The translations under genes and the position numbers were made by a program. 64,000 nt of DNA from Piromyces finnis finn (taxonomy: Eukaryota > Fungi > Neocallimastigomycota). The notes under the pieces were generated by a model, which was not told the DNA's origin, did not search any database, and was given only the letters and a program-made list of their open reading frames with translations. Below, in pieces: positions 14,851-17,681 of this stretch. Each line of letters opens with the position of its first letter. Position 1 is the first letter of the stretch. The stretch is taken from positions 62,001-126,000 of the forward strand of contig MCFH01000002.1 of assembly GCA_002104945.1 (NCBI GenBank). The letters run 5' to 3'.

Positions 14851-17681
14851 CTAAAGTTTTGATTTAACACTAGCAACCTTACCAATGATTGTATCTATAT
14901 ATTTATTATATAATATTATATTAATAAAAAATTATTAGTTTTATTTTCATATATAAAGCTTATTATTATTCTAATTACCTGGTGCATATTTTTTAATAAC
15001 ATCAAATTGATGAAGCATATTGAATTCAGCAGAGGCATCCCTACCAGCATATAATAAAATGGCATTTTTACCTCCTGGATGATCATTTAAGAAACTGGTC
15101 ATATTTAATACAAAATCATTAACAATAATCCAACAGTCATTTTCAGTATTGTGCTTACTAACTTCCTCAATTGTGAAAAGACGTTCACCGTTTGGTGAAG
15201 TTTCAGGAGAAGAAGAAGTCTCATTGGATGGTTGTGGAGCAACAGAATCCTTTTTTTCAGGCTTCTTTTCAGTTTCTTCCTTCTTCCTAATAGACTTTGG
15301 TTTAGAACTGGAAGATGAAGATGTTTCAACTTCAGTAGATTTACCGGTTAATGGAACTTTAACTTCCGTTGTAGTAACATTATCACCAACACCAAATAAT
15401 TCTAAAGTAATTTTCATAGATGGTTGAATTTCTTTTTCTTCAATTTCTTCCTTCTTGTCTTCTGCCTTTGGAAGATTAGTAATAATATTAGAAAGATCAT
15501 TTAATAAATAACTAGAAGCACTAGCACCTGAAACTCTGCCAAAAACAACGCAAGCAAGAAGAGAACTTCCACCAAGACGATTGGCACCGTGTACACCACC
15601 ACAAAGTTCACCTGCAGCAAATAAACCTGGAATTGGACCTTCTTTGTTTAATACTTCAGCATTTGGTGAAATTTTGACACCTATCAATATATGAACGCAT
15701 TATATTGAAAAAAAAAAAAAAAAAAAAAAAAAAAAAAAAAAAAAAAAAAAAAAAAAACGAAAATAATAATTATAATAATTATAGTAATAATAATTGTTAA
15801 CAAATAACACTTTTAAATGTATAATTACTTTATATAATTTTTCTATTAAAAATTATTTTATTTTAATATTTGTTTCCTTACCACCCATAGTGAAGTGAAG
15901 AACTGGACAAACAATAGCTACATAAAATTCATCATCCATAACAAATGGTCCATTTGGGAAGAATTTTTTTCCAAATTTATCTGTTTTAGTTTCAATGTTT
16001 TTGTTATATTTATTAAAATGTTTTTCTAACTTTTCTGGTGATATATGCATGTCAGCAGCTAATTCAGCACCATTATTAAATTTCTTCATAAGACCTCTTC
16101 CCATATAATGTCTTATATAAATAATAATAAAAAAATAAATAAATAAAAAGAGAGAGATTTTATAATTTAATTAAATAAAATACCAATAGAATATAGTATA
16201 AATATAATAATAATTAAATCATTATTTATTTTGATATTTACTGAACATGCCAATGTAATTCTTTAGCGGCTTTACTATTTAAAACAAGTCTAAATGGACC
16301 TTTGCTACTCCACATTCTATCAGTAACATAATCACGATAACCTAATTCATTACAGAATCTTTTACCATGACGATCAATTAAAATACCACCAACACCTCTT
16401 AAAGCTTCAGCTGCTAAGAACTAATAATAAGTAATAAAATAGTTAAATATTAAATTTAATTATTAATATTATTTTCTTTTATTTCATATTAAGGAAAGTA
16501 AAATGTTAATATTATTATATATACCTTCCATTTAGCATCTGGATCTTTTGGATCAACTAAACCAGTTGGGTGAACTTGAACCATATCCATATGAATTAAT
16601 TCAGCACCAATTGCTCTAGCCATTTTAATACCATCACCAGTAGTGGTTTGAGCATTAGTGGATGGTAAATGATATATATCTGGTCTAAACAAATATTATA
16701 TTATTATTATTATTATTATTATTATTATTATTATTATTATTATTATTATTATTATTATTATTATTATTATTATTATTATTATTATTATTATTATTATTAT
16801 TATTATTATTATTATTATTATTATTATTATTATTACCTAAAAGTCTTAATTAATGAAGATTCTGTAAAATCAGCAGCAAAACCACCAGTAGCAATAATAA
16901 CAGGACCATATTCTTGGAAGGTTTGACCATTCATTTGATATTCAACACCAATAACTGCATTTGTTTCTTCATTCTTTATTAATTTACTAACATTGGCTTT
17001 TTTAAGAATTTTAGCTCTGTTTGGCTGGGCTTTTTCAATAGCTTCTAAAGCCTCTAAAAGAGTATAAGTAATGGTCATTCCTGGGAAACGTTCTGTGCCA
17101 CGATGAGTACGAGGGTAAGTGTGACCACCAAGTCTTGAAACTAAAGATAAATCAATTTTGAATTTTTCACTTAACCATTCGACAGCAGCAGCACTTTCCC
17201 AGGTTAAAACTTTTGTTAATTCTGGAACAATTAATTGCTTTGCAGAATCCGCAGAATCTTTGTAAAAAGCATCAACACTATCCTTTTTTTAAAAGATTAA
17301 AAATTTAATAAAAATACATGATATATAAAATATACAATATACGGTTTTAATTATTTATATATTGATTAATATAATATATATATTTCATAATTTATTATAT
17401 CTAATTTCATTTTATATATATGATAATTAATAATTATGTTTATCTAAAAATTATTTCTTTAAGTTTTTGACTCAATAATTAATATTTACATTAATTCCAA
17501 GTTTTATTTGTGTTTTAGTTAAAGCACCATTTATTCCGGAAGTTGCTTTAGTTGAGTTTCCACCAAGAAAAGCATTCTTTTCTAGAACTACAACACTGGC
17601 ACCTCTTTCTAAAACAGTATGAGCAGCAGATAAACCAGCTAAACCTCCACCAACAATAATAACCTTTGGTCTATTTTCCAT
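14851..17681 (-). CDS. Soluble FAD-dependent fumarate reductase (Osm1/Frd1, flavocytochrome c family) with C-terminal cytochrome b5 domain; multi-exon
   Basis: GGGLAG FAD-binding motif, [43 protein letters not shown] and [13 protein letters not shown], then a low-complexity linker and a b5 domain ([10 protein letters not shown]...DCWII...HPGG...AG.DASAEF). A terminal exon at 14851-14894 gives ...[16 protein letters not shown]. An acceptor-like TGCAG just upstream of the ATG leaves an extra 5' exon possible. Confidence 0.9.
15708..15757. repeat. 50-nt poly(A) tract in a fumarate reductase intron
   Basis: Direct count; a T-run on the coding strand near the intron 3' end. Confidence 0.9.
16692..16834. 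repeat. (TAT)n microsatellite in a fumarate reductase intron
   Basis: About 140 bp perfect trinucleotide run; source of the poly-Tyr ORF. Confidence 0.95.

What the first reader, a model, noticed from the sequence alone, without database searches (positions are those of the whole stretch)
14851..14979. Hidden terminal exon gives the fumarate reductase a canonical PTS1 (-SKL)
Seen: the ORF track ends at APGN*, but an 84-nt GT-AG intron (14895-14978) leads to a 44-nt exon encoding [14 protein letters not shown]. This restores the usual b5 C-terminal IG motif and ends in K-S-K-L. Established: C-terminal SKL is the prototype Pex5-recognised peroxisomal signal, and trypanosome glycosomes contain an NADH-fumarate reductase. 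Inference: a peroxisome-type compartment in a strict anaerobe may use fumarate as a redox sink. Retaining the intron would give a non-SKL isoform (dual localisation).
Basis: partly seen in the sequence, partly recalled or inferred. Interest (0 to 1): 0.72.

Follow-up and report, generated by a model that had tools for sequence, protein, structure and literature searches.

The report
Fumarate reductase ends in peroxisome tag
The small last exon of this anaerobic gut fungus (Piromyces finnis) fumarate reductase gene is real and ends in the classic peroxisome address tag SKL, kept in every gut-fungus relative sampled. The exon is already in the public gene model, and a peroxisomal enzyme of this build is known from Penicillium.

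Summary
Observation confirmed. On the minus strand, an 84-nt GT..AG intron (14978-14895) joins exon 6 to a 44-nt last exon (14894-14851) encoding (D)[13 protein letters not shown].

The window is Piromyces finnis (GCA_002104945.1, MCFH01000002.1). The deposited 650-aa protein BCR36DRAFT_579304 is tiled exactly by the seven exon translations and already ends in SKL, so the exon was hidden only from a naive ORF track.

Intronless mRNA-size contigs of Anaeromyces robustus and Neocallimastix lanati map to their genomes with the same seven exons and the same 44-nt last exon. All 8 gut-fungus protein clusters end in SKL, while the four residues before it vary.

The last exon supplies the final beta-strand (IIGK) of the cytochrome b5 fold, followed by a disordered tail. 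Intron retention would therefore break the heme domain, and the dual-localisation idea is weak.

A fumarate reductase-cytochrome b5 fusion is a reported microbody protein of Penicillium chrysogenum. Transcripts for peroxisomal import machinery are reported for gut fungi. Import itself, and a role as redox sink, remain inference.

I could not get junction reads for P. finnis itself. The scan holds other unchecked notes on peroxisome signals in this genome. Verdict: a new member of a known kind, of moderate interest.

The parts
17490..17681 (-). Exon 1 (192 nt), ATG at 17681. It starts directly at the FAD Rossmann motif ([16 protein letters not shown]), with no N-terminal presequence.
   Evidence: equals P0128 residues 1-64
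17283..17489 (-). Intron 1, 207 nt, GTAAAT..AAG, 10% GC
16837..17282 (-). Exon 2 (446 nt), FAD_binding_2
   Evidence: P0128 65-212(+R)
16685..16836 (-). Intron 2, 152 nt, almost entirely an (AAT)n microsatellite
16525..16684 (-). Exon 3 (160 nt), holds the VHPTG motif
16421..16524 (-). Intron 3, 104 nt
16242..16420 (-). Exon 4 (179 nt), holds the ALRGVGG motif
16112..16241 (-). Intron 4, 130 nt
15882..16111 (-). Exon 5 (230 nt), ends in HFTMG(G)
15681..15881 (-). Intron 5, 201 nt, with a T run of about 55 nt
14979..15680 (-). Exon 6 (702 nt). It holds the end of the FAD domain (GANRLGG), a low-complexity linker of about 110 aa, and most of the cytochrome b5 domain, including both heme histidines (HPGG, MLH). 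It ends ...KKYAP + G.
14895..14978 (-). Intron 6 (the finding): 84 nt, GTAATTAG..ATATAG, phase 1, 8% GC. An in-frame TAG at 14973-14971 gives APGN* if the intron is retained.
   Evidence: Same position in A. robustus (189 nt) and N. lanati (244 nt).
14851..14894 (-). Exon 7 (44 nt): (D)[13 protein letters not shown] plus TAG. IIGKV is the last beta-strand of the b5 fold; ASVKSKL is the flexible tail.
14854..14862 (-). Codons TCA AAA CTT = Ser-Lys-Leu, the C-terminal PTS1-type tripeptide
   Evidence: conserved 8/8 in gut fungi

Best explanation
Window 17681-14851 (minus strand) is the seven-exon Piromyces finnis gene for a 650-aa soluble flavoenzyme. Its parts are an Osm1/flavocytochrome-c-type FAD fumarate reductase domain (about residues 1-460), a low-complexity linker, a C-terminal cytochrome b5 heme domain (572-643), and a 7-residue flexible tail ending Ser-Lys-Leu.

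Shown: the 84-nt last intron is a normal constitutive intron. Its removal is needed both to complete the b5 fold and to place SKL at the C-terminus.

Inferred:
- The folded holoenzyme is recognised through SKL by the PTS1 receptor Pex5 and imported into a peroxisome-derived, oxygen-independent compartment of the anaerobic gut fungus.
- There, heme b5 passes electrons to the FAD, which reduces fumarate to succinate. This would give peroxisomal dehydrogenases or flavoenzymes an electron outlet that needs no O2.
- The protein is the gut-fungus counterpart of the fumarate reductase-b5 fusion found in Penicillium chrysogenum microbodies.
For: Gene structure and splice:
- Sequence reading.
- Exact tiling of the deposited protein P0128 by the seven exon translations, and an identical gene span.
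- The same 7-exon structure, with a 44-nt last exon, in A. robustus and N. lanati. This comes from mapping intronless mRNA-size contigs onto their genomes.
- Junction-spanning contigs L001 and L012.

Enzyme family:
- TIGR01813 flavo_cyto_c scores 402 bits against a cut-off of 285.
- The best solved relative is yeast 'Fumarate reductase 2', 5glg, E 2e-98.
- Pfam FAD_binding_2 plus Cyt-b5, matched 1-73 of 74.

PTS1:
- SKL at the extreme C-terminus in 8 of 8 Neocallimastigomycota clusters, while the four residues before it vary: ASVK, ADAT, ANGT, ADAK, ANAT, GELK.
- The S codon and the stop codon differ between species, so the tripeptide is held at the protein level.
- In the AF2 model of the orthologue's b5 domain (pLDDT 90), IIGKL is the last strand and the final residues are disordered, so they should be accessible.
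- There is no N-terminal presequence.

Precedent and machinery:
[quoted passage not shown] - 33 of 121 full-length family members carry PTS1-like ends.

Electron-outlet idea: natural fusions of this enzyme to an acyl-CoA oxidase (P0200) and an acyl-CoA dehydrogenase (P0232, Chromera).
Against: - No localisation data exist for this protein.
- Peroxisomes have not been shown in gut fungi. [quoted passage not shown]
- Current metabolic maps draw fumarate reductase in the cytosolic branch (PMC9484062, Fig. 6 legend).
- I did not test the PEX genes of this genome. Only unchecked scan notes exist.
- The named aerobic chytrid homologues lack a PTS1.
- The tree cannot say whether the tag was inherited or gained.
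- The electron donor is unknown.
- No junction reads were obtained for P. finnis itself.
Confidence: 0.6

Rival explanations
1. The enzyme works in the cytosol, as drawn in current fermentation maps. On this view the SKL end is not an effective import signal in these fungi, because there is no functional peroxisome, the tail is masked, or only a minor fraction is imported.
For: - The metabolic map for Neocallimastix places fumarate reductase in the 'secondary cytosolic electron disposal' branch (PMC9484062).
- Peroxisomes are not demonstrated in gut fungi (PMC5168858).
- The closest named aerobic chytrid homologues end IGxLKK, without a tag.
- The flexible tail is short, about 7 residues.
Against: - SKL is kept in 8 of 8 gut-fungus clusters across at least three genera, while the adjoining residues and the codons change. 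That is hard to explain without selection on the tripeptide.
- Import-machinery transcripts are reported.
- The same enzyme build was found in Penicillium microbodies.
Confidence: 0.28
2. Regulated retention of the last intron makes a second, functional isoform ending APGN, without SKL, so the enzyme is in both cytosol and peroxisome.
For: - Retention would end the protein 2 codons into the intron, at the TAG 14973-14971.
- From my own knowledge, not checked here: fungi are known to make cryptic PTS1 forms by alternative splicing (Ustilago GAPDH/PGK).
Against: - The retained form loses the invariant IG strand. G81 is invariant in 57 sequences, and IIGKL is the last beta-strand of the b5 fold in the AF2 model. 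Pfam coverage drops to 64 of 74. The heme domain would probably misfold.
- All mRNA-size contigs recovered from relatives are spliced.
- No retained form was seen.
Confidence: 0.07
3. The exon is a chance open frame and the real protein ends at APGN*.
For: A naive ORF track ends there.
Against: - Exact agreement with the deposited protein.
- A conserved DTIIGK motif in about 230 relatives.
- Spliced transcripts in relatives, with the same 44-nt exon.
- GC of 30% in the exon against 8% in the intron.
Confidence: 0.02

Closest known systems
Penicillium chrysogenum microbody protein Pc12g03090, 'fumarate reductase-cytochrome b5 fusion' (Kiel et al. 2009, as cited in PMC7348727)
   Same: Same two-domain build (soluble FAD fumarate reductase plus cytochrome b5). 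Found by mass spectrometry in purified microbodies (peroxisomes), so a peroxisomal enzyme of this kind is known.
   Different: It comes from an aerobic ascomycete. I had no sequence for it, so I tested neither orthology nor its targeting signal. Here the host is a strict anaerobe in which peroxisomes have not been shown.
Saccharomyces cerevisiae soluble fumarate reductases Osm1/Frd1 (PDB 5glg 'Fumarate reductase 2')
   Same: Best solved relative of the FAD domain (E 2e-98, residues 6-454). Soluble, non-covalent FAD. From my own knowledge, it is needed for anaerobic redox balance in yeast.
   Different: The solved yeast chain (471 aa) aligns only to the FAD domain. From my own knowledge, the yeast enzymes have no cytochrome b5 domain and no PTS1, and are cytosolic or mitochondrial/ER.
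Trypanosoma brucei glycosomal NADH-fumarate reductase FRDg
   Same: A soluble fumarate reductase carried into a peroxisome-derived organelle by a C-terminal PTS1, where it serves as redox sink of a succinate fermentation branch. The glycosomal location is supported by the glycosome literature listed; the details are from my own knowledge.
   Different: From my own knowledge, FRDg has an ApbE-like N-terminal domain and a C-terminal cytochrome-b5-reductase-type domain. The present protein has neither (Pfam) and has a b5 heme domain instead. This is an analogy, not membership.
Shewanella flavocytochrome c3 fumarate reductase (PDB 1qjd, 1qo8, 1d4c)
   Same: The same FAD fumarate reductase fold (E 1e-57 to 1e-63), fused to a heme domain that feeds electrons to the flavin.
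   Different: From my own knowledge, the heme domain there is an N-terminal tetraheme c-type cytochrome and the protein is bacterial and periplasmic. Here there is one b5 heme at the C-terminus.
Anaerobic peroxisomes of Archamoebae (Mastigamoeba, Pelomyxa, Entamoeba; PMC8887013, PMC8629394)
   Same: PTS1-dependent import into catalase-free, oxygen-independent peroxisomes in anaerobes with hydrogenosomes or mitosomes.
   Different: A different lineage and different cargo (for example inositol metabolism). The two open papers checked (PMC8887013, PMC8629394) do not name gut fungi, and in PMC8887013 fumarate reductase appears only as a possible function of complex II. The Mastigamoeba paper is not held.

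Membership tests
Soluble FAD fumarate reductase (flavocytochrome c / Osm1 subfamily, TIGR01813) | Whole-domain match above the curated cut-off | tested here: met
   TIGR01813 scores 402.3 bits against a cut-off of 285.45, residues 7-454. Pfam FAD_binding_2 matches 2-414 of 414.
Soluble FAD fumarate reductase (flavocytochrome c / Osm1 subfamily, TIGR01813) | N-terminal dinucleotide-binding GxGxxG, and the four active-site motifs (HPTG, RGxGG, HxTMGG, GANRLGG) | tested here: met
   All motifs are read directly in the exon translations. That they hold the catalytic His/Arg residues of Shewanella Fcc3 is my recollection; I did not align them here.
Soluble FAD fumarate reductase (flavocytochrome c / Osm1 subfamily, TIGR01813) | Fumarate-to-succinate activity and the identity of the electron donor | not testable with these tools
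   Needs the recombinant enzyme.
Cytochrome b5 heme-binding domain (PF00173) | Full-length profile match, with both axial histidines | tested here: met
   Matches 1-73 of 74 in P0128, but only 1-64 of 74 without the last exon. H43 (HPGG) and H66 are invariant in 57 sequences.
PTS1 (Pex5-dependent) peroxisomal matrix cargo | [SAC][KRH][LM] at the extreme C-terminus | tested here: met
   SKL followed by TAG
PTS1 (Pex5-dependent) peroxisomal matrix cargo | Signal conserved in orthologues | tested here: met
   8 of 8 Neocallimastigomycota clusters end SKL, with variable residues before it.
PTS1 (Pex5-dependent) peroxisomal matrix cargo | Tail exposed and flexible | tested here: met
   AF2 model of the A. 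robustus orthologue's b5 domain: the last strand ends at IIGKL, and the final 4 residues have pLDDT below 50. This is a model, not a structure.
PTS1 (Pex5-dependent) peroxisomal matrix cargo | Receptor and import machinery present in the organism | not tested
   Only the literature (PMC5168858) and unchecked scan notes (s1-173818 PEX5, s1-183669) bear on this. I had no PEX query sequence and no access to the rest of the genome.
PTS1 (Pex5-dependent) peroxisomal matrix cargo | Demonstrated import | not testable with these tools
   Needs a reporter assay, fractionation or microscopy.
Trypanosomatid glycosomal fumarate reductase (FRDg) | ApbE-like N-terminal domain and a C-terminal b5-reductase-type domain | tested here: not met
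   Pfam finds only FAD_binding_2 (and overlapping FAD/NAD families) plus Cyt-b5. The protein starts at the Rossmann motif.
Fungal microbody fumarate reductase-b5 fusion (Pc12g03090 type) | Fumarate reductase plus b5 in one chain, with peroxisomal location | tested here: inconclusive
   The architecture is met. Location is predicted only. Sequence orthology to Pc12g03090 was not tested, as I had no sequence for it.

The most novel reading that the evidence does not exclude
Anaerobic gut fungi keep an oxygen-independent peroxisome in which this fumarate reductase-b5 is the terminal electron outlet. It would take electrons through its heme from peroxisomal flavoenzymes or NADH-linked steps and deposit them on fumarate. 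This would be a fungal counterpart of the glycosomal succinate branch, and the fourth anaerobic-peroxisome lineage after the Archamoebae. Two kinds of hints point this way: the natural fusions of this enzyme to acyl-CoA oxidase or dehydrogenase, and unchecked scan notes of a malate dehydrogenase ending in SKL and an MFE-2 ending in AKL in this genome.
Probability: 0.4. Interest if true: 0.7.

Novelty: new member of a known kind. Interest (0 to 1): 0.42.

Why it matters
Whether Neocallimastigomycota have peroxisomes, and what such organelles would do without oxygen, is unsettled. The one paper I found that touches it says it is 'not entirely clear'.

This gene gives a clade-wide conserved, abundant-enzyme cargo with a textbook signal. 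It is therefore a ready marker for fractionation, antibodies and reporter assays.

If import holds, the fumarate-to-succinate step in gut-fungus metabolic models would move out of the cytosol. Peroxisomal redox balance in an anaerobe would also gain a concrete mechanism.

As a genome-annotation matter it is ordinary, because the public gene model already has the exon.

Tried and rejected
1. Junction reads for this genome.
- For openness: a local tblastn inside a script used window 14001-18500 as its subject. Locus L013, fetched by a protein look-up, spans those places and was only string-matched to the window.

2. Joined spliced model. The deposited protein P0128 served in place of a joined model.

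3. Scan of metagenome contigs with exon 6. It gave only distant b5 matches and no gut-fungus orthologue.

4. Word search with the 87-aa b5 part. It gave four distant hits, none of use.

5. Literature.
- No held paper links 'anaerobic fungi' with 'peroxin'.
- Zarsky & Tachezy 2015 does not mention gut fungi.
- Le et al. 2020 and Kiel et al. 2009 are not held.

6. Tree of 109 full-length relatives with the tails cut off. The gut fungi form one starred clade on a long stem, weakly (91) beside two unnamed sequences ending in SKL. The PTS1 label needs at least 9 changes, at least 4 of them forced by starred branches. Inheritance versus gain of the tag is therefore unresolved.

7. I did not use the large representative search. 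The protein was not left open by the cheaper searches.
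Full report
**What is in the sequence**

The finding lies on the minus strand. Read that way, the long open frame 15687-14971 ends ...KKYAPGN*. The codon after CCA is split by a GT at 14978. An AG at 14896-14895 is followed by AT ACA ATC ATT GGT AAG GTT GCT AGT GTT AAA TCA AAA CTT TAG. Splicing 14979 to 14894 therefore gives ...[19 protein letters not shown].

**The whole gene**

There are seven exons:
- Exon 1: 17681-17490
- Exon 2: 17282-16837
- Exon 3: 16684-16525
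- Exon 4: 16420-16242
- Exon 5: 16111-15882
- Exon 6: 15680-14979
- Exon 7: 14894-14851

The six GT..AG introns are 207, 152, 104, 130, 201 and 84 nt long. Intron GC is 2-10% and exon GC is 30-37%. The coding sequence is 1953 nt, or 650 aa.

**Whose gene it is, and whether the exon was hidden**

The closest fragment hit, P0001, belongs to a cluster whose full-length member is Anaeromyces robustus ORX80473.1, 'Flavocytochrome c'. Using that protein as the query returned full-length gut-fungus orthologues. One of them, P0128, is 'hypothetical protein BCR36DRAFT_579304 [Piromyces finnis]', 650 aa.

- P0128 contains every one of the seven exon translations exactly and in order. They are separated only by the split-codon residues R, Q, G and D that my splice sites predict.
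- Its genomic locus, L013 (GCA_002104945.1, MCFH01000002.1:75851-80681), is an exact substring of the window (18681..13851).
- The annotated gene span is 2831 nt, which equals 17681..14851.

So the window is P. finnis, and the public gene model already has the last exon and the SKL. It was hidden only from a stop-to-stop ORF track.

**Is the splice used?**

I could not lay reads on P. finnis. I worked beside those places.

The indirect evidence is strong:
- Four runs from three studies hold 0.83-0.84 of the sampled words of 14851-15687. A spliced mRNA would hold 0.85 and genomic DNA about 1.0. This is suggestive only.
- In A. robustus, intronless contigs of about 2.1 kb (L015 and L016 from two runs, and L001 from a third) encode the full orthologue or nearly all of it. 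They map to the genome (L014) in seven blocks at the same coding positions. The last exon is 44 nt and the last intron 189 nt.
- The same holds in Neocallimastix lanati (L018 and L019 against L017), with a last intron of 244 nt.
- A metatranscriptome contig from a relative 90% identical in protein to the window's enzyme (L012) reads ...GCACCAG|ATACCATTATTGGTAAGG... straight across the junction.

The intron position and the 44-nt exon are thus conserved across three genera, and the intron is removed in their mRNAs.

**What the exon contributes**

- The Pfam Cyt-b5 profile is matched only to position 64 of 74 in exon 6 alone, but to 73 of 74 in P0128.
- In about 230 family members, the second heme histidine is followed by xxxV[IV]xKYAP[DE]x[IV]IG. 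The G is invariant in a 57-sequence alignment.
- An AlphaFold model of the A. robustus b5 domain (mean pLDDT 90) puts IIGKL as the last beta-strand and leaves the final residues disordered.

The exon therefore completes the heme domain and presents a short flexible tail. A retained intron would stop after two codons (TAG at 14973-14971) and delete a core strand.

**What the protein is**

- TIGR01813 (flavocytochrome c) scores 402 bits against a cut-off of 285.
- The best solved relative is yeast fumarate reductase (5glg, E 2e-98), followed by the Shewanella flavocytochrome c3 fumarate reductases.
- The motifs HPTG, RGxGG, HFTMGG and GANRLGG are present.
- The protein starts at the Rossmann motif, with no presequence, in all orthologues. 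A hydrogenosomal address is therefore not expected.

**The SKL**

All 8 Neocallimastigomycota clusters end DTIIGK[VLI]-xxxx-SKL. These are A. robustus, N. lanati, P. finnis and five unnamed transcript clusters. The four residues before SKL vary, and the serine and stop codons differ between species. That pattern argues for selection on the tripeptide itself.

Across the wider family, 33 of 121 full-length members carry PTS1-like ends on tails of 7-41 residues. The named aerobic chytrids end IGxLKK. The Mortierellomycota have a 14-residue tail ending SKL, SKI or AKI.

A tree with the tails removed puts the gut fungi in one starred clade on a long stem, weakly next to two unnamed sequences ending in SKL. 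The label changes at least 9 times on that tree. Inheritance versus gain cannot be decided.

**Comparison with what is known**

[quoted passage not shown] 2009). A peroxisomal enzyme of this build is therefore known.
- Metabolic maps still draw fumarate reductase in the cytosolic branch (PMC9484062).
- I found no held paper describing peroxisomes or their cargo in these fungi.
- The scan's own notes on this genome list PEX5, a PEX39-like gene, and PTS-tagged MFE-2, malate dehydrogenase, hydroxy-acid oxidase, a DEG15-type protease, PFL and SerA. They also list a second fumarate reductase with a signal anchor. These are unchecked leads that I did not test.
- From memory only: anti-SKL antibodies were once reported to label organelle proteins of Neocallimastix. 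Cargo like this one could explain that report.

**Mechanism, with its status**

Shown: the gene structure, the domain make-up, the C-terminal SKL and its conservation.

Inferred: Pex5-dependent import of the folded holoenzyme; electron flow from heme b5 to FAD to fumarate; and a role as an oxygen-independent electron outlet of a peroxisome-derived compartment.

One hint about the donor comes from two relatives that are natural fusions of this enzyme. One is fused to an acyl-CoA oxidase (P0200, a metatranscriptome contig). The other is fused to an acyl-CoA dehydrogenase (P0232, Chromera velia). This suggests that the heme domain collects electrons from such flavoenzymes.

**Verdict**

The core reading (a real exon that creates a PTS1) is right, but it is already in the public annotation. 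The peroxisomal redox-sink idea is reasonable and testable but unproven. The dual-localisation idea is weak. Overall this is a new member of a known kind and of moderate interest, mainly as a marker for the still undescribed peroxisome of anaerobic gut fungi.

Noticed in passing
P0200 and P0232 (proteins); P0206: Natural fusions of the fumarate reductase-b5 enzyme with an acyl-CoA oxidase (P0200: FRD 4-440, b5 551-622, ACOX 668-1099, contig cut) and with an acyl-CoA dehydrogenase (P0232, Chromera velia: FRD, two b5 domains, ACAD 732-1122). P0206's long tail starts like the ACOX N-terminus of P0200 and then ends AKL, so it may be an alternative 3' form. Together these suggest that fumarate serves as the acceptor for acyl-CoA dehydrogenation without O2.
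   Followed up: partly
window 1805-4000 (+): An intronless 731-aa ORF with squalene-hopene cyclase N and C domains (E 1e-70). From my own knowledge, it is likely the tetrahymanol-synthase-type cyclase regarded as a hallmark of anaerobic gut fungi.
   Followed up: partly
window 4931-6827 (+) and 25212-29756 (+): Reverse-transcriptase ORFs (RVT_1). The second is an uninterrupted 1514-aa ORF, so there are retroelement copies near the gene.
   Followed up: no
window 16699-16835 and 15707-15765 (minus-strand introns 2 and 5): Intron 2 is almost wholly an (AAT)n microsatellite of about 137 nt, and intron 5 holds a T run of about 55 nt. The first of these blocked read laying.
   Followed up: no
window 13868-14407 (+): A convergent neighbour with a zf-Nse (Nse2/Mms21-type SUMO ligase) RING, annotated as a 272-aa product in GenBank. 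Its 3' end faces the fumarate reductase 3' end across about 440 nt.
   Followed up: no
window 22285-22935 (+) and 44511-48320 (+): A SOR/SNZ (PdxS, vitamin B6 synthesis) exon, and a 1269-aa ORF starting with ankyrin repeats and otherwise without Pfam matches.
   Followed up: no
proteins P0057, P0063, P0080, P0084, P0107, P0117, P0119: Several family members from other fungi end in unrelated residues right after ...NMLHD[AP]KV (P0119 after ...LMLHNRV). This looks like gene calls reading into a terminal intron at a different position, 9-10 codons upstream of the gut-fungus one.
   Followed up: no
They lie in the AT-rich 3' intergenic region and were left out of all later searches.
   Followed up: no
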